In this document: positions 39,441-47,679 of the stretch, in pieces
Position numbering within the stretch: the stretch's first letter is position 1
Layout of the letters: each line of letters opens with the position of its first letter
Source of the DNA: Takakia lepidozioides
Taxonomy: Eukaryota > Plantae > Bryophyta
Assembly: GCA_030704615.1 (NCBI GenBank)
Contig: CM060733.1
Coordinates: forward strand, 14,136,001-14,200,000
Length of the DNA: 64,000 nt
Direction of reading: 5' to 3'
Translations under genes and position numbers: made by a program
Notes under the pieces: model-generated
The model's input: only the letters and a program-made list of their open reading frames with translations
Database searches by the model: none
Told to the model about the DNA's origin: nothing

Positions 39441-42400
39441 ATGCAGAAGTCAAGGTCAAATGAATGATAGCATTGCATGAATGGAACTTTTGAGAGGTGA
39501 TGGGGATTCTCCATCTGAATTTTGTCGTGTTTGGCACATTCTATTATTGCAGTTGAAGTCAAAGTATCCATTTCTTCTGCAAGGTATTATCTCCGTGCAG
39601 TGGAGAAGAGTTTGTAGCCTGTTTCTTGCAGAGGTCTACTTTCAGAGGAGTACTCGAAATGGTAAAGGGGTTGCGATTGTGAGATGAGGCCATGATACCT
39701 TTCATCCCCTTGGTAATGGTGTAAGTTGAGATTTGTGAGTCTCAGGAGTCCCATCAGGAGTTCTATCTAAAGATAATATGCTTTTCTTAATGATTTAGTG
39801 GATGTGTGTTCTATTCTACTCCTCTTTGGGCATTTCACATCAAGTTTGCACTTTCTTTCTTCTAGTGGGAGCAGTTCTCCATGCTTTCCCGATGGACTTT
39901 TGAATATGGTCAGCTGTTTTGGTGAATGTGACTTAACATTGGTTAATAACCTCTTCAAGGGCGGCTAGAAGCACAAAGACTACACCAGAATGCACATATG
40001 CTACCCTGCCACACCCCATGGACAGGTAGAGAGGAGAGCTCCTCAACAAAGCATAAATAGCACATCTTCTACCAACACCATGAACAGGTGGTTTCATGAA
40101 AATGGATGGTCACATGGGAGGGTGGACAGCAGGTAGTATGCTGGCTAGTGTGCCTGGCCCTAAACAGTGTGAAGACGGTCAGCCTTGACCCAAATTGCCT
40201 AAAGTACGGCGGAGGTGCCCCTTGTACACAATTAGTTTTTTTCCTGTGGACCTCTAAATGTTTCTTACCACCAGCAATGTCTTAGCCCCACAGGGTAGGG
40301 AATAGTTCCTGCGGGTACTGGATCTCAAGGATAGAGCACTGATGAGTGCTGCCTAGGTAGTTCTGGCCTGCTACTGTGGTATCATCTTCTACCCCTTCAC
40401 TTTGGGTGGTATTCCATGCTTCCAACTCATAGGGTTATTTTACTTTGAAAGAGGTTATTTAGGGGGCTGAGTTGTCAGGGGTTACTCTGGCTGTTGTCCT
40501 TTCAGACAAAAAAAAGTTATGGCAGAGAGGCCTTCAGATTCAAGGATCCACAGTATCAACAGCATTTCATCATCCAAATGTAGGCGAACTCAACTGCAAA
40601 TGAAAAAGTCTGTTAGACTCTTATGGAATAGATAAGCTTGTACTTGTCCAGGCTCAAAAGCTGTGGAGCTGTTAACTCTCTTGAACTTATTTTACCAGCA
40701 ACTGTGCGCATCAGCCCTTTTTTTTTTTCATTTATGAAGTTTCACAGACATGGCTACAGACAGCAGGCTCCTATGCCTGACACTTTGCCTATCTCCTTGC
40801 GTGATCTCCTCCAGGCTGTTGGCTAGGAGGAGGTTCGCTCTTGGCTAAGAGGAGGTTCGCTCTGTTGGAGTAACTTACTATAGCTTCTGTTTTCGTCGCC
40901 GGTTGAGTAGCTTACTATAGCTGTTGTTTTTTTCTCTAGCTGAGTAGCTTACTATAGCTTTTTGTTTTCTTCTCTTGCTTCTTGTTCTTTCCCCTCCCCA
41001 CCTTTTTGGGAACTTCTCATCCTATGTACGTTCACCCATTGTACATGATGTAAATAAAGTCTTACAGGGTTCATCATCCTTGGAACTTTATTGGCGATTA
41101 TATTCAATTTTTTTGGTGCAACGGCTGGCAACAATACTTCAATTCAGGTTGAGTTTTGGCTGTGAAACCAAAATACAATTTGTGATGGCGACACTCTGAT
41201 TTTTAAGATACAAAATTTGTGGCTCCAATATTGGAATATGAACGCTACTTGCACAATGACCAAGGCAACAGCCCATAGAAAATGCTAAGACGAGCTGGGC
41301 GGTACATGTAGGCACTACATGGAAACTTATCCTTAGAGGCATCGTAGTGCAGACTCTGCGATATCTAGTGGTGTACCTGTGTAGATCTGGCTATAGTTAC
41401 ACAATTGAGATCCAAATTTGAAGGCGCCAAGCTTGACGGAGCCAAAACGCTTCATTATCGTGTTGTTTATGACTAGTGGTAATGACACAGACTCTTCGGA
41501 CATAGGCAGCAAATCTATCTTAAGCAGCTACTCAAATCCAAGGGAGTAGCAGCACCAGGAACGAAGGATCTGTGTATCTACGGCAATTTGTAGCACGCGG
41601 GATTGCCATCACCTGCCAGCGTTTGGCTTTCCTTCTCGAAATTTCTTCCTGAACAATCAGCTACTGTAGACCTCTGCCCTTGCGAAGACTGTATCAATTA
41701 CGATCAGGTGTTGGGGTGGGGTTTCTCGATGTCTATTTCCAGGACTTCCTCTGGATATGCAAGTTCCGATTAGGGACAAAGACAGTTTGTGAGCGTCTAT
41801 CAAATGTGCAAAAACTTCATAATATACACAACCAAGGGGAACCCCAACAGCTAGGGTGGCCATTCTGGTGTAGAGATCAACATGTTATTGCAGCAAGGAA
41901 AACAATCGACACAAATCAAGTAGAAAGCGCTGGCACTTCACACTTCCATTGAGAAGCTAACATGTTGCCCAGCTATTTCTAAGGCGTCACTATACACAAC
42001 GTGAAGGAATTGAGCCGACTATCAGCGTTAGATTAGTATCTTCAATTCCCAATTGATATGAACTCCCATGAAATGAGACCATTAGACTAGTGCTCACGAT
42101 TCTTGTTACCGAGCTTGTTACACGAACTCTGACGCAGTTTTCTAGATGAATGTGACTGTCCTCACTTCACCTAAGGAAAATGAATGTGGCAGTAAAATTC
42201 TACAAACTCTTAGGCTGTTAAATTTTGCATTAAAGTGCAGAAGAGAAATAAGTAATTATCTGTCAAAAAGATAGTTGAAAGGATTGTAGTTGACAAAAAC
42301 AGATAATTGGATTGTGGCTGCGCGGTGCAATGCCCATTGAAAGAGAGATTCCACAGAAGACAGCGACCAGTACTTTTGACAGACGATCAGATACAAGCGA

Positions 42401-42743
42401 TTTATTTATGGATAGCTGACTGCAGTAAAAACCGACTGCAGTCACTTATTTGAAGAGTATTTCATGACCTGCCCAAACCCATGCACATCTCGACAAGGCA
42501 CGATCGTGCCATGTTTTAGCACCTTCAGAGCTTGCTTGAAAATCGAAGTTCTAACAATCTAGAATTGTTGGATCTGGATGCGAGGAAGTAAACGCTCCTG
42601 TACAGCCTCAAAGTCTACAACAAAATCTGGACCACCTTGTTTCTATCCTACGCAGTCTACACTAATCTAGACCACCTCGTTGACAATCCTAGGACGGAGC
42701 AGTGATGCTATCCCGCGCAGGATTCAGCAGTCTACGTCAAAAT

Positions 42744-44336
42744 CTAGACCACCTTGTTGAAAATTCTGCGACGGAGCAGTGAATTAGCAGGATCCTCGCG
42801 TTCGCTTCCCTCGACCAGCTGCTTGTTCTGGCAGATCCAAGCGCGAAGCTCGGTTCCCATCTGCAATCTGCTCAATCACCATTTTCATTGAATGATTAGA
42901 TCCACCTTTCGACGAGTTCGCTTAGAATCTCAAGCAACAAACTGATCTGAACTAGATCTTGTAGAAATATGTGCATGCCTTATACATTTGCCGAATGAGA
43001 TAGTACCCACCTTGCTGGTATGGAGGCTTCTATGCCAGCTGCGCAGGCCACCTCTTCGATGTCGAAGGGTAAGTTACGGTCAAACTCCTTCATAGCGTGC
43101 TTGTCCCCCTCCACCCTCTTCAGATGTGCCACGTGGTGTGATGCACAGCGGACTTTCTCACCCTGCAATTACAGTAAATTATCAGAATTTTGCATCTTTC
43201 TGCATGTCAAGTGACGATTTCTCCGAACTCTACCGACCCCTCAAATTTATCGTCGATAACCGGCATCAGAAACCAAGAGAACTATTCCATGAAACGGCAG
43301 CACAAACTCACCTCATTCTCGACGCAACGTTCGAGGAAGACCACAGCACATGCATCGTTGGCCTTAATCGCCTGCTGATGAAGATCATTTGCCTTCTTGT
43401 ACGCCACCTGTGAACACTCACGAACCAGCCAACATCAACAAACAGAACCATCTTCGTCTTGCTGATGTACAAAAATAGCGCCAAATTACTTTGTGAACGT
43501 ACCTTGCTTACTGCCAGCATCTCGCTGAAACCGTACAGCAGATCAGACTGATCCTTCTGTGAGAAGCGGTCGGAAGAGATCTGAGCAACAGACCCAATTT
43601 CCACCCTCGCACCGCGTTTGGCGAGAAACTCTATGACCCTCCAGCTATCGTTGATTTCGATTTGGGATTTGATCTGTTGGTAAGAACATCGCCAAATGTT
43701 AAGGTGAGACTTTGAACTCTAGCTAGAATGATAACCACTTGCGCTTTGCCAAATTAGCAGGCTGAACTGATTACCTTGCAGTACAAGGCCACCCCGGGAA
43801 GCGCTACATTGTCATGGCTGAAGAAAGCCGATGCCGCAGCAAAAAGTGCTGCGGTATTGGCGTGATATCTGTAAGACGAGCCAAATGTCATTAGTGGACG
43901 AGTTCAACACAAAACAGCCACCTGCATATATGTATCCGGACGGGACGGTGACAATGCAAGAAATCACTTGAGAGAGTGGGCCTTGAACGCACGCAATGCA
44001 CTTATTGAGGGCGTTGTCGATCTCAGCGCTTGCTTGCGGAATGCGCGCCAACGAGGCACTGACATCACCCACTCTTACGCTCTTGATCTGCTCCATCTCC
44101 TTCTTGATCTGCTCCAGAAGTTTAATGTTGATTAGTTACGCAAGTTACATGTTCCGATCGATATCAGCACAGTCTACATAAGAAAACAGAGTCACTTAAG
44201 CACTTGCTGAACGTCAACTGGTCTCGATTCTAGCTGGGGCCGAAAACTATAATATAAAGTTTCACGTTCGTGACTGTAGCGGGCTGTTTACCTCTTCCGC
44301 ACAAGGGAAGTCCGCGCCTCCAGCACGAAAGGCCAT
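42744..44336 (-). CDS. Divergent ferritin-like protein, copy 1 (7 coding exons, ~265 aa)
   Basis: MAFRAGGADFPCAEE/IKKEMEQ..SLAR..ALNKCIA/YHAN..FFSHDNVALPGVALYCK/..FLAKRGARVEI..DLLYGFSEMLAVSK/..NDACAVVFLERCVENE/GEKVRCASHHVAHLKRVEGDKHAMKEFDRNL..; aligns colinearly with plant ferritin helices A-E; frame stays open through GT-AG junctions. Confidence 0.85.
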
Positions 44337-44599
44337 TGTTTCCGGAAGTGTTGATAAATCTGGTACGCTTACCTGCGAATGTGCACAACTTACTCAGAAG
44401 ACCCAGTACTTAATCAAACAATGCGAACTTCTGAATCGCTCTCTCTGTACTAACTAACATTCTTCCAGCTGCGAAAGCAATGAACACAGGATAACTCACT
44501 CACTCACAGTCGATTGAGAAATGTCGCTACCGAGGTCTTTAGGCAGATGCAGGTGAAGAGCACGAAGAAGGATTGTGAGATAACCAGAGAAAGATGGGG

Positions 44600-45110
44600 G
44601 TATGTATAGGGCTGGAACTGCGAGTAGAGCAGGGCTGCACACCCCCCACGCACTCCTCCCACGCAGTCAAGTGCGAGAGACCTGCACTTGCCCGAGCAGC
44701 CGCGGCATGCCACACCATGTGTCCACCTCGCATGTGTAGCACTGTAGTTTACCACCAGTAATTCAAGTTATTTTTATCTAGATTTACTGCTACTACGTAC
44801 GTTGCAGTTGAAGGCCATCACACCAAAATGCTGAGAATTCTGAGAGAGTCCATTTACTAAGTTTAAACCGGGTGAAGTATTTTCTCGATCCAGTAAGCAA
44901 TGCCTACAACTCTTCACGTGCGCAGAATCGACAAGTGGCTGCGACGCGGCTGCTGGTGGCTACACACTAGTGACGCAAAGCGACACGTGCTTCGGTGTTG
45001 ACATCCGTTGGCGAGCACGCGTGGAACGTGAGCAGTGCGATTCCAGCACCAGCACTCTTTCTATTCTGCAACTCATCCTCAGCTTCACCCACTTTGCAGG
45101 CCTATATATA
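44600..45110. promoter_or_regulatory. Shared divergent promoter with G-box/ABRE and CE3-like motifs
   Basis: CACGTG at 44915 and 44984, ACGCGTGG at 45017, TATATATA at ~45103, TATA-like sequence on the minus strand at ~44605. Confidence 0.55.
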
Positions 45111-45363
45111 TCTCGATCCGTCTTTGTTTATCTCACAAACTCTTCTTCGCTGTGAGATCTGCGTGCCTGTTCCTGAAAGCCTCAAGTGTCATTCGTCAAT
45201 CGACCGAGTGAGTTGTCATGATAACGTGTTTCAAATTACGCTGGTGCCCAGCTTTGAAGGATGTTAGTATATAAAGAGGCGAAAAATGATTTTACATCGT
45301 TTGGTTAGAAGGTCTTCTGATGGGGCTTTGCACGTTCGCAGATCTATCTACTCTTCTGCAACA

Positions 45364-46967
45364 ATGGCGCATAGGGGAGGAGGCGTCGGTCAGGATAACT
45401 TCCCTTACGCGGAGGAGGTAAACAAACCGCTGCAGCGTCCCAACATGGACATTTCTTGTATTTTTCTGAGATAGAATACTAGAAACCAGTTCGTAGTAAT
45501 CCAGGGACTCTGGTTGCTGTTATATTGATCAGCAGTGCTGATCGAAACATTCAAAAAACTTGCGCTAGATTAACACTTAACTCTGGACCAGATCAAGAAG
45601 GAGATGGAGCAGATCAAGACCGCTAGAGTGGGTGATGTGAGTGCCTCGTTGGCGCGCATTCCGCAAGCAAGCGCTGAGATCGACGACGCCCTCAACAAGT
45701 GCATTGCGTGCGTTCAAGGCCCACTATCTCTTGATTTCTTGCGTTGTCCCTGTCCCGTCCCTATATATGCAGGTGGCTGTTGGAAGACGAGTTTTATGTT
45801 GAACTCGTCCACTGATGACATTTGACTCGTCTTGCAGATATCACGCCAATAGCGCAGCACTTTTTGCTGCGGCATCGGCTTTCTTCAGCCATGACAATGT
45901 AGCGCTTCCCGGGGTGGCCTTGTACTGCAAGGTAATTAGTTCAGCCTACTGATTTGGCAAAGCGTAAGTGTTATCATTTTAGATAGACCTCAAAATCTCA
46001 CCTTAACAGTGGCGATGTTGTTACCAACAGATCAAATCCCAAATCGAAATCAACGATAGCTGGAGGGTCGTGGACTTTCTCGCCAAACGCGGCGCGAGGG
46101 TGGAAATTGGGTCTGTTGCTCAGATCTCTTCCGACCGCTTCTCACAGAAGGACCAGTCTGATGTGCTGTACGCATTCAGCGAGATGCTGGCAGTAAACAA
46201 GGTACGTTAGCAACTTGTATGAAGGCTTGTATGAAGTTATTTGACGCTATTTTAGTCAACAATTATGCATAAGACATTGATATAGGTTCTCTCTGTTGAT
46301 ATTGGCTGGTTCGTGATTGTTCACAGGTGGGGTACAAGAAGGCCAATGATCTTTTTCAGCGGGCGGGGAAGGCAAACGATGCACGTGCTGAGGTCTTCCT
46401 TTCAGGTTGCGTCCAGAATGAGGTGAGTTTGTGCTGCCGATTCATCGAATAGTTCTCTTGCTTTCTGATGCCGCTTATCGACGATAAATTTGAGGGGGCG
46501 GTAGAGTTCGGTGTAGAAAGATGCAAATTTTTGATAATTTACAATTGCAGGGTGAGAAAGTCCGCTGTGCATCACACCACGTGGCACATCTGAAAAGTGT
46601 GGAGGGGGACAAGCACGCTATGAAGGAGTTTGACCGTAACTTACCCTTCGACATCGAAGAGTTGGCCTGCGCAGCTGGCATAGAAGCCTCCATACCAGCA
46701 AGGTACGTACTATCTCATTCGGCTAATGTATAAGTCATGCACATATTGCTACAAGATTAAGTTCATCACTTTGTTGCTTGAGATTCTAAACGAACTCGTG
46801 GAGAGTTGGATCTTATCATTGAATGAAAATGGTGATTGAGCAGATTGCAGATGAGAACCGAGCTTCGGGCTTGGATCTGGCAGAACAAGCAGCTGGTCGA
46901 GGGAAGCGAACGCGAGGATCCTGCTAATTCACTGCTCCGTCGCAGGGTGTTCAACAAGGTGGTCTAG
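45364..46967 (+). CDS. Divergent ferritin-like protein, copy 2 (7 coding exons, ~268 aa)
   Basis: Exons 45364-45417, 45592-45707, 45838-45931, 46031-46201, 46327-46422, 46551-46702 and 46844-46967 join in frame; motifs FSHDNVALPG, KRGARV, DVLYAF and FDRNL correspond to ferritin FDRDNVALKG, KRGGRV, DALYAM and FDQML. Confidence 0.88.
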
Positions 46968-47679
46968 ATTTTGATGTAGCAGACCGCTGAATCCTGCGCG
47001 GGATAGCATCACTGCTCCCTCCTAGGATTGTCAGCGAGGTGGCCTAGACTTTAGTTTAGACTGTTGAAACCTGCATGCGCAGGACAGAGATGAGGGGTCT
47101 AGATTTTGTTGTAGACGTTGAGAGGGTAAATAGAGACACGATCAAGTGCTTCCTCGCGGATCTAACATCTAGATTTGAAAATTCTAGATGTCGAGGTTTT
47201 TCAAGCAAGCTCTGAAGAGCAAAGCAAGGTATCGATCGGCGTGCCTTGTTCATAGCCTTAGTGCACGTGGTTTTGGGTTGGAGGCAGGTCAAGAATTACT
47301 CTTCAAAGTGACTGGAATTGCTTACTGCAGTGAGCTGTACATAAAAACATCGTTTTTACGAATGGTCTGTCGTCTGTTTACGATCTCCTGTTCAACTATC
47401 TTTTTCAAGTATTCAACTGTTGCTGGAATTGAACAGGTTGGAGTTTGAAAGTGTATGCGCGATACACAAGAATTATCACCTCAGAAGTGACATTCACATC
47501 TGAAAATGCTGAATCATAGTTTGTGTAACAAGAATCACGCTCAAAAGGCTGTAGAGAGTCTTATTTCATGGAAAGATCATATTGGGCACTGAAGACAGTG
47601 GGATCGGTGCATTTACACTTCGTATAGTAATCTTTTCTAATCTTTCCCATGTTAGCTTTGACGGGGAAGTTAAGAGCTC

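What the first reader, a model, noticed from the sequence alone, without database searches (positions are those of the whole stretch)
42744..46967. Head-to-head pair of pseudo-ferritins: no transit peptide, remodelled ferroxidase centre, long C-terminal tail
Seen: two intact 7-exon genes align with plant ferritin, including the extension peptide (EEIKKE..SLAR). By manual alignment (human H numbering) E27->H, Y34->F, E61->I, E62 is kept, H65->D, E107->N/S and Q141->E. The ATG lies only ~10-13 residues before the extension peptide and the upstream exons lack an ATG. About 60 extra residues follow helix E (PFDIEE..TELRAWI..EDPANSLLRRR.FNKVV). Established: plant ferritins are organelle-targeted and ferroxidase-active. 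Inference: a cytosolic, non-catalytic or altered-metal ferritin cage, L-chain-like or cargo-bearing, that I do not recognise as described.
Basis: partly seen in the sequence, partly recalled or inferred. Interest (0 to 1): 0.85.

Follow-up and report, generated by a model that had tools for sequence, protein, structure and literature searches.

The report
Tailed, iron-site-less ferritin gene pair
Two neighbouring, transcribed moss genes encode a plant-type ferritin that has lost its plastid address, its iron-oxidising site and its iron channel and has gained a conserved 57-residue tail. This makes them members of an unstudied family of mosses and land-dwelling green algae that resembles the brine-shrimp stress chaperone artemin.

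Summary
At 42744-44336 (-) and 45364-46967 (+) lie two intact genes with 7 coding exons each, all GT-AG, encoding proteins of 265 and 268 aa that are 89% identical. They arose by an inverted duplication. Exons are better kept than introns, and RNA contigs of a public run splice five introns of the minus gene exactly and match each copy specifically.

The proteins belong to a conserved subfamily of plant-type ferritin:
- It is found in Sphagnum, Physcomitrium patens, other mosses and trebouxiophyte algae (Coccomyxa, Myrmecia, Asterochloris).
- Relatives pass Pfam Ferritin, hit soybean ferritin-4 at E=1e-19 including the extension peptide, and fold as ferritin (Z 22.9).
- The 3-fold-channel carboxylates and the acidic net charge are also gone, and no member has a transit peptide.
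- The first ~30 residues of the tail are conserved from algae to mosses and have no detectable relative elsewhere.

Whether these proteins form a cage is untested. My best reading is a cytosolic, iron-inactive ferritin shell or dimer that protects against stress, convergent with Artemia artemin. That function is inferred, not shown.

I found no paper on the family; databases call members 'ferritin-3, chloroplastic'. This scan had already reported a 3-gene cluster of the same family 34 kb beyond this window.

The parts
42744..44336 (-). Minus-strand gene, coding part. CDS exons: 44336-44292, 44108-43993, 43868-43775, 43673-43503, 43407-43312, 43162-43011, 42867-42744 (stop included). Product 265 aa.
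   Evidence: Model. Introns 2-6 are confirmed by spliced RNA contigs with CT..AC ends. Exon lengths match the Sphagnum orthologue.
45364..46967 (+). Plus-strand gene, coding part. CDS exons: 45364-45417, 45592-45707, 45838-45931, 46031-46201, 46327-46422, 46551-46702, 46844-46967 (stop included). Product 268 aa.
   Evidence: Model. An 89-nt RNA contig lies on exon 2 with 0 mismatches at a stretch where the copies differ at 4 places. The other introns are inferred from homology with the minus copy and with Sphagnum.
44337..45363 (.). Shared 1-kb divergent promoter and 5'-UTR region. TATA-like site at 45103. Predicted non-coding first exon and 5'-UTR intron of the plus gene (intron 45208-45341) and of the minus gene (intron about 44373-44507). 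Two perfect CACGTG G-boxes at 44915 and 44984.
   Evidence: Sequence reading and motif scan. There is no RNA coverage here, so the UTR introns and the promoter are predictions.
42378..44617 (.). Left arm of the inverted duplication.
   Evidence: blastn and the repeat finder: the core 42653-44146 matches 47063-45557 at 88% over 1538 nt, with weaker matches out to 42378/47371 and in to 44617/45094.
45094..47371 (.). Right arm of the inverted duplication.
   Evidence: Exons are 83-99% identical between the arms and introns 66-89%.
46604..46964 (+). Coding sequence of the C-terminal tail of the plus gene (second half of exon 6, intron 6 and exon 7). It spans helix E, a conserved LPF..E..A.AAG.EA.IP.RLQ.G...RA segment and a variable end.
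   Evidence: Family alignment and conservation line. The AlphaFold model of relative P0010 has helices at 208-219 and 228-236 with block pLDDT 73-91; residues 244-260 are under 50.

Best explanation
Shown: the two genes are young inverted duplicates. Both are intact and transcribed, and their exons are better kept than their introns. They encode members of a conserved green-lineage offshoot of plant-type ferritin. The offshoot keeps the extension peptide, the four-helix bundle, the long loop and helix E. It has no transit peptide, no ferroxidase centre, no acidic 3-fold channel and no acidic net charge. It carries a ~57-residue C-terminal tail whose first ~30 residues are conserved from trebouxiophyte algae to mosses.

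Inferred: the protein stays in the cytosol and still assembles through ferritin-type contacts, at least as the 2-fold dimer and probably as a 24-mer shell. It cannot take up or oxidise iron. Because helix E ends inside a ferritin shell, the tails would line and partly fill the cavity. I take the most likely function to be an iron-independent stress protectant or holdase chaperone, a convergent counterpart of Artemia artemin. Artemin is a ferroxidase-less ferritin homologue with a C-terminal extension inside its 24-mer cage. Several clustered paralogues may co-assemble.
For: Identity:
- A search with exon 4 found Sphagnum and Coccomyxa relatives.
- These pass Pfam PF00210 (37.8 and 44.2 bits against a cut-off of 24.5) and hit soybean ferritin-4 (3A68) at E=1e-19, with the extension peptide aligned.
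- The window models score 358 bits against the family profile, end to end.
- The AlphaFold model of P0010 has pLDDT 84.7 and matches plant ferritins at Z 22.7-22.9, rmsd 1.2-1.8 A. The extension peptide is aligned too: model 7-206 on 3A68 14-207.

Loss of the iron function:
- Ferroxidase positions are replaced and mostly variable across 18 sequences.
- The D131/E134 columns are mostly non-acidic.
- Core charge of full-length members is about -4 to +3, with pI 6-8, against -11 and pI 4.8 for a canonical ferritin.

No transit peptide: short N-termini in every member, and in-frame stops upstream of the ATG in mRNA contigs of relatives.

Constraint and expression:
- dN/dS is 0.48, and exons are better kept than introns.
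- Spliced, copy-specific RNA contigs exist.
- The exon structure is the same in Sphagnum and nearly the same in Coccomyxa.

Analogy with artemin:
- Named family members come from mosses and terrestrial or lichen-forming algae.
Against: - No oligomer model, localisation, metal-binding or stress-expression data exist here.
- The tail shows no sequence relation to artemin or to anything else, so the parallel is an analogy only.
- Cysteine content, which is held to drive artemin's redox switch, varies from 1 to 13 in the family.
- Sphagnum is not a classic desiccation-tolerant plant.
- The conserved E62/D65 pair could still bind a metal.
- The habitat pattern rests on few named genomes and on word-limited searches.
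Confidence: 0.5

Rival explanations
1. An L-chain-like or otherwise slow iron store in the cytosol. The shell still mineralises iron without a ferroxidase centre, alone or as a heteropolymer of the clustered paralogues.
For: The ferritin fold and extension peptide are kept. E62 and an acidic residue at position 65 are conserved. Several paralogues lie side by side, here and in Coccomyxa.
Against: The 3-fold-channel carboxylates are lost. The net charge is near zero instead of strongly negative. Y34 is Phe in 14 of 18 sequences and never Tyr. 24 tails of about 57 residues would take roughly two thirds of an 8-nm cavity (my estimate from standard protein density).
Confidence: 0.15
2. Not a cage. 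The ferritin bundle has been re-used as a dimer or small oligomer, and its conserved tail docks on another protein or on RNA. This would be a regulatory or scaffolding role unrelated to both iron and chaperoning.
For: The most conserved parts are the AB turn, the KRGG loop and the first half of the tail. The tail has invariant E, L and R positions, as expected of a specific contact surface. The far C-terminus ends in a conserved hydrophobic pair (V-V, V-I or V-L) in most members.
Against: The extension peptide and helix E, which in plant ferritin serve contacts between subunits of the shell (established knowledge; 3A68), are kept and modelled with confidence. No partner is known.
Confidence: 0.25
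3. Decaying duplicates of a ferritin gene with no function of their own.
For: Catalytic residues are lost. dN/dS between the copies is only moderately low, 0.48.
Against: Both reading frames are intact with canonical splice sites. Both copies are transcribed and spliced. Exons are better kept than introns. The same architecture, tail and intron positions are kept from algae to mosses.
Confidence: 0.03

Closest known systems
Plant (plastid) ferritin, e.g. soybean ferritin-4 / SFER4 (PDB 3A68) and Ulva pertusa ferritin (3VNX)
   Same: Best sequence and structure match. The four-helix bundle, long loop and helix E are shared, as are the plant-specific N-terminal extension peptide, the FxRDNVAL turn and the KRGG loop.
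   Different: No transit peptide. Ferroxidase residues are replaced. The 3-fold-channel carboxylates are lost. The charge is neutral rather than acidic. There is a ~57-residue tail after helix E.
Artemin of Artemia (PDB 7RVB; PMC9742257)
   Same: A ferritin homologue that cannot handle iron because the ferroxidase centre, nucleation centre and 3-fold channel are altered. It has a 45-50-residue C-terminal extension after helix E with a proline-kinked loop and an extra helix F. It occurs in an organism that survives drying.
   Different: Independent origin: artemin derives from animal ferritin, this family from plant-type ferritin with the extension peptide. The tails show no sequence similarity. 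Cysteine richness is not conserved here. Cage formation and chaperone activity are unproven for the plant family.
Vertebrate L-chain ferritin
   Same: A ferritin subunit without a ferroxidase centre.
   Different: The L chain keeps an acidic cavity face and the 3-fold channel and co-assembles with a catalytic H chain in the same compartment. Here the channel and the acidity are lost, and the canonical plant ferritin is in the plastid (established knowledge of plant ferritin targeting).
Desiccation-related proteins with the Ferritin_2 domain (PF13668) of lichen algae and resurrection plants
   Same: The name 'ferritin-like', and occurrence in terrestrial green algae (PMC9434271).
   Different: A different Pfam family. 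The proteins here match PF00210 only.

Membership tests
Ferritin (Pfam PF00210), eukaryotic plant type | Significant match to the Ferritin profile | tested here: met
   Relatives P0005 and P0008 score 37.8 and 44.2 bits against a cut-off of 24.5. The window models score 358 bits against the profile of these relatives. Single window exons alone do not reach significance. The joined model was not sent to Pfam.
Ferritin (Pfam PF00210), eukaryotic plant type | Four-helix bundle with long BC loop and short fifth helix E | tested here: met
   AlphaFold model of relative P0010 (53% identical to the window protein): Z 22.9, rmsd 1.2 A over 174 residues to soybean H-2 ferritin.
Ferritin (Pfam PF00210), eukaryotic plant type | N-terminal extension peptide of plant ferritins | tested here: met
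   HMMER aligns residues 7-200 of P0008 to 18-204 of 3A68. The structural alignment covers model 7-206. The motif FP.AEEIKKE is present in both window proteins.
Ferritin (Pfam PF00210), eukaryotic plant type | Di-iron ferroxidase centre (E27, Y34, E61/E62, H65, E107, Q141) | tested here: not met
   The window proteins have H, F, I, E, D, N/S, E. In the family only E62 and D65 are conserved.
Ferritin (Pfam PF00210), eukaryotic plant type | Acidic 3-fold entry channel (D131, E134) | tested here: not met
   V and S (plus gene), V and E (minus gene). The family columns are mostly non-acidic.
Ferritin (Pfam PF00210), eukaryotic plant type | Plastid transit peptide | tested here: not met
   10-13 residues precede the extension peptide. 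There is no upstream ATG in the predicted plus-gene UTR. Relatives' mRNA contigs carry in-frame stops upstream of the ATG.
Ferritin (Pfam PF00210), eukaryotic plant type | 24-subunit hollow shell | not testable with these tools
   Only monomer prediction is on hand, and model coordinates are not returned.
Artemin-type ferritin-derived chaperone | Ferritin homologue unable to bind iron, with a C-terminal extension after helix E | tested here: met
   compared with the description in PMC9742257.
Artemin-type ferritin-derived chaperone | Common descent with artemin (sequence relation of the extension) | tested here: not met
   The tail of P0010 finds no PDB chain at E up to 10, although 7RVB was deposited in the PDB. 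The best matches of the whole protein are plant ferritins, not animal ones.
Artemin-type ferritin-derived chaperone | Thiol-rich, redox-switched | tested here: inconclusive
   5 and 8 Cys in the window proteins, 1 to 13 in relatives, no invariant Cys.
Artemin-type ferritin-derived chaperone | ATP-independent chaperone activity and stress-linked accumulation | not testable with these tools
   This needs assays and expression series.

The most novel reading that the evidence does not exclude
Green plants and algae that colonised land independently evolved their own 'artemin': a cytosolic, iron-blind ferritin cage whose internal tails act as a stress-released holdase. The family is kept in mosses and terrestrial trebouxiophytes, expanded into gene clusters, and lost in seed plants.
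Probability: 0.3. Interest if true: 0.8.

Novelty: new variant of a known kind. Interest (0 to 1): 0.6.

Why it matters
Plant ferritins are taught as plastid iron stores with an active ferroxidase. This is a second, conserved line of the same protein that gave up iron and the plastid and gained a constrained tail.

If it forms a cage with internal tails, it would be a convergent plant counterpart of artemin and a candidate component of stress or desiccation tolerance.

The family is open to direct testing. Physcomitrium patens, a moss with routine gene targeting, has one copy (XP_024376644 / PHYPA_007319), which is currently mis-modelled and misnamed 'chloroplastic'.

It is also a natural ferritin scaffold with a neutral interior and built-in internal peptides, which may interest cage engineers.

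Tried and rejected
- Pfam and PDB sequence searches with single window exons gave nothing significant. Exon 4 hit Ulva and soybean ferritin at the right place, but only at E 0.17-0.76.
- The joined spliced proteins have no reference, so they were not sent to any database, fold or family tool. They were built and used only inside local scripts from window.fa. Database work used single exons by reference or database relatives instead.
- Searches with the tail alone found only family members or nothing: protein database with region 201-260, ESM Atlas features, and PDB sequences.
- The window's own proteins are not in the protein collection, so no structure of the window protein itself was predicted; relative P0010 was folded instead.
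- Literature searches for the family, for moss or alga ferritins without a transit peptide, and for the P. patens accessions found no description. 'Ferritin-like' hits in lichen algae concern PF13668, a different family.
- A new conserved metal centre is rejected as the leading idea, because five of the seven positions vary freely.
- An assembly artefact is rejected as the source of the palindrome: the arms differ by about 12%, and RNA contigs match each arm specifically.
- Intron positions could not be compared with those of canonical plant ferritin genes, because no canonical plant ferritin locus could be fetched.
- A fold search with the tail alone was not done.
Full report
**What is in the sequence**

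The region 42378-47371 is an inverted duplication. Its core arms, 42653-44146 and 45557-47063, are 88% identical. Each arm holds one gene, and the two genes point away from each other across a 1-kb spacer.

I built both models by hand and by script.
- The plus gene has coding exons 45364-45417, 45592-45707, 45838-45931, 46031-46201, 46327-46422, 46551-46702 and 46844-46967.
- The minus gene mirrors it: 44336-44292, 44108-43993, 43868-43775, 43673-43503, 43407-43312, 43162-43011 and 42867-42744.
- All borders are GT-AG. The products are 268 and 265 aa and 89% identical, with dN 0.058 and dS 0.123.
- Exons are 83-99% identical between the copies and introns only 66-89%, so both copies have been under constraint since the duplication.
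- A non-coding first exon and a 5'-UTR intron are likely in both genes, but nothing supports them experimentally.

**Transcription**

One public run (X1, kept as contigs) holds spliced pieces. They skip 42868-43010, 43163-43311, 43408-43502, 43674-43774 and 43869-43992 with CT..AC ends. These are introns 6 to 2 of my minus-gene model.

The last of these joints corrected my first model. The donor of exon 2 lies 9 nt further on and adds three residues. Sphagnum and Coccomyxa genes have the same 116-nt exon.

The contigs are copy-specific. One lies on minus exons 6-7 with 0 mismatches where the copies differ at 6 places. Another lies on plus exon 2 with 0 mismatches where they differ at 4. So both genes are transcribed.

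Only contigs of one small run were available. Expression level, conditions and 5' ends are therefore unknown.

**Is it ferritin?**

Single exons are too short to tell. Pfam gave nothing, and PDB gave Ulva and soybean ferritin at the right place but only at E 0.17-0.76. The joined proteins have no reference, so I did not send them to any database, family or fold tool. They were handled only in local scripts.

The link is therefore made through relatives.
- An exhaustive search with exon 4 found full-length relatives of 263 aa and 254 aa, later identified as Sphagnum jensenii and Coccomyxa proteins.
- These pass Pfam Ferritin above its cut-off.
- P0008 hits soybean ferritin-4 at E=1e-19, and the alignment starts inside the plant extension peptide.
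- A profile of 16 family members matches both window proteins end to end at 358 bits.
- The window proteins also hit a canonical bacterial-type ferritin directly at about 25 bits.
- The AlphaFold model of relative P0010 (53% identical to the window proteins) has pLDDT 84.7. It superposes on plant ferritins at Z 22.7-22.9, rmsd 1.2-1.8 A, extension peptide included.

I aligned the family to a canonical ferritin that carries all the ferroxidase ligands.

Across 18 family sequences only two of these positions are conserved: E62 (15 E) and the Asp at 65 (16 D). Position 34 is Phe in 14 and never Tyr. The other positions vary freely. This is a dismantled centre, not a rebuilt one.

I add two further losses.
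- The 3-fold-channel positions D131 and E134 are V and S (plus) or V and E (minus), and they are mostly non-acidic in the family.
- The subunit is near neutral: the core charge of full-length members is about -4 to +3 and the pI 6-8. The canonical ferritin in the set has -11 and pI 4.8.

**No transit peptide**

Every member starts 5-15 residues before the extension peptide.
- In two mRNA contigs of a moss relative an in-frame stop precedes the ATG with no Met between; in a third contig the stop is two codons upstream.
- In the window, the unspliced upstream sequence of both genes has in-frame stops.
- The predicted spliced 5' UTR of the plus gene has no ATG.

**The tail**

59 residues follow the FDRNLP end of helix E. 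The first ~30 are conserved from algae to mosses, in the pattern LPF..E..A.AAG.EA.IP.RLQ.G...RA with invariant E, L and R.

In the model they form helices at 208-219 and 228-236 with block pLDDT 73-91; the last ~17 residues are disordered. Most members end in a hydrophobic pair.

The tail has no relative outside the family by sequence, language-model features or PDB sequence search. No structural match extends past residue ~208-211.

**The family**

Named members:
- Sphagnum jensenii and S. magellanicum.
- Physcomitrium patens (XP_024376644, PHYPA_007319), which has three conflicting 3' gene models and the name 'ferritin-3, chloroplastic-like'.
- Coccomyxa subellipsoidea, C. sp. Obi and C. elongata.
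- [Myrmecia] bisecta and Asterochloris.

Several moss-like mRNA contigs belong too. An ESM Atlas cluster of 84 members, mostly Chlorophyta, has the same shape through residue 240.

Coccomyxa C-169 has three copies in tandem.

Gene structure is old. Sphagnum shares all six coding intron positions with the window genes, and Coccomyxa shares five of six.

In the tree the window pair forms its own well-supported branch. The deeper order of the groups is unresolved. I saw no seed-plant member, but the searches were word-limited or used a short query, so absence is not proven.

**How it probably works**

Shown:
- ferritin fold of the plant type;
- no presequence;
- no ferroxidase ligands, no acidic channel and no acidic charge;
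- a constrained tail;
- expression and selective constraint.

Inferred:
- The extension peptide, the AB turn, the KRGG loop and helix E are all kept. In plant ferritin these elements make contacts between subunits (established knowledge). Assembly therefore probably persists, at least as the dimer and likely as the 24-mer.
- Helix E ends inside the shell, so 24 tails would sit in the cavity and fill roughly two thirds of it (my estimate).

This is the design of artemin, the ferritin-derived diapause chaperone of Artemia. Artemin has an altered ferroxidase centre, nucleation centre and 3-fold channel. [quoted passage not shown] Its C-terminus hugs the inner wall before a helix F turns into the cavity, and the dimer is believed to be the working chaperone (PMC9742257).

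I therefore commit to an iron-independent protective or holdase role in the cytosol, with about 0.3 probability for that specific function. The identity and the loss-of-iron-function statements are far more secure, at about 0.9.

The parallel is analogy, not descent. The family's best matches are plant ferritins, and its tail is unrelated to artemin's.

**Rivals**

- A slow, L-chain-like iron store. The lost channel, the lost acidity and the cavity-filling tails count against it.
- A non-cage dimer with a docking tail. This is not excluded.
- Decaying duplicates. Expression, intact frames and conservation from algae to mosses exclude this.

**Novelty**

The proteins are in databases under automatic and partly wrong names. 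I found no paper that describes them.

This scan has already reported the same family from a neighbouring 3-gene cluster in this genome, with the same reading (s1-459954). The present pair adds two more expressed members. It also adds exact, RNA-supported splice models, the shared intron structure with Sphagnum and Coccomyxa, the P. patens orthologue, and the artemin comparison.

I class it as a new variant of a known kind.

Noticed in passing
window 44915-44920 and 44984-44989: Two perfect CACGTG G-box/ABRE-like palindromes lie in the 1-kb spacer between the divergent genes, 120-190 bp upstream of the TATA-like site of the plus gene (45103). About 0.25 such sites are expected by chance in 1 kb. 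This may hint at ABA or light control.
   Followed up: partly
window 46929-47114 and mirror 42612-42782: The last ~50 nt of the coding sequence, stop codon included, recur about 80 nt downstream in the 3' UTR at 75% identity. Their final 19 nt recur a third time. The pattern is present in both gene copies, so it is older than the inverted duplication.
   Followed up: partly
window 46327-46422 / 43407-43312 (coding exon 5): Exon 5 covers the end of helix C and the start of helix D, including the former 3-fold-channel positions. It is the most diverged exon within the core arms, 83% against 95-99% for exons 2-4, 6 and 7 (exon 1, outside the core, is 65%). It holds most of the amino-acid differences between the two copies.
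   Followed up: no
L001:1-12680 (Coccomyxa subellipsoidea C-169, AGSI01000013.1): Three tandem genes of the same family (260, 251 and 253 aa) lie on one strand directly beside a Cpn60/TCP-1 chaperonin gene. The adjacency may be chance.
   Followed up: no
P0043, P0044, P0045 (Physcomitrium patens XP_024376644.1/.2, PNR53644.1): The P. patens orthologue has three conflicting public gene models (222, 226 and 277 aa). They truncate or misread the tail exon, and the entry is named 'ferritin-3, chloroplastic(-like)' although it has no presequence.
   Followed up: partly
window 44022-44110: One 89-nt RNA contig of run X1 lies on exon 2 of the minus gene with 2 mismatches (44052 C>T, 44061 G>C). It may come from an allele or from a further paralogue of the cluster.
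   Followed up: no
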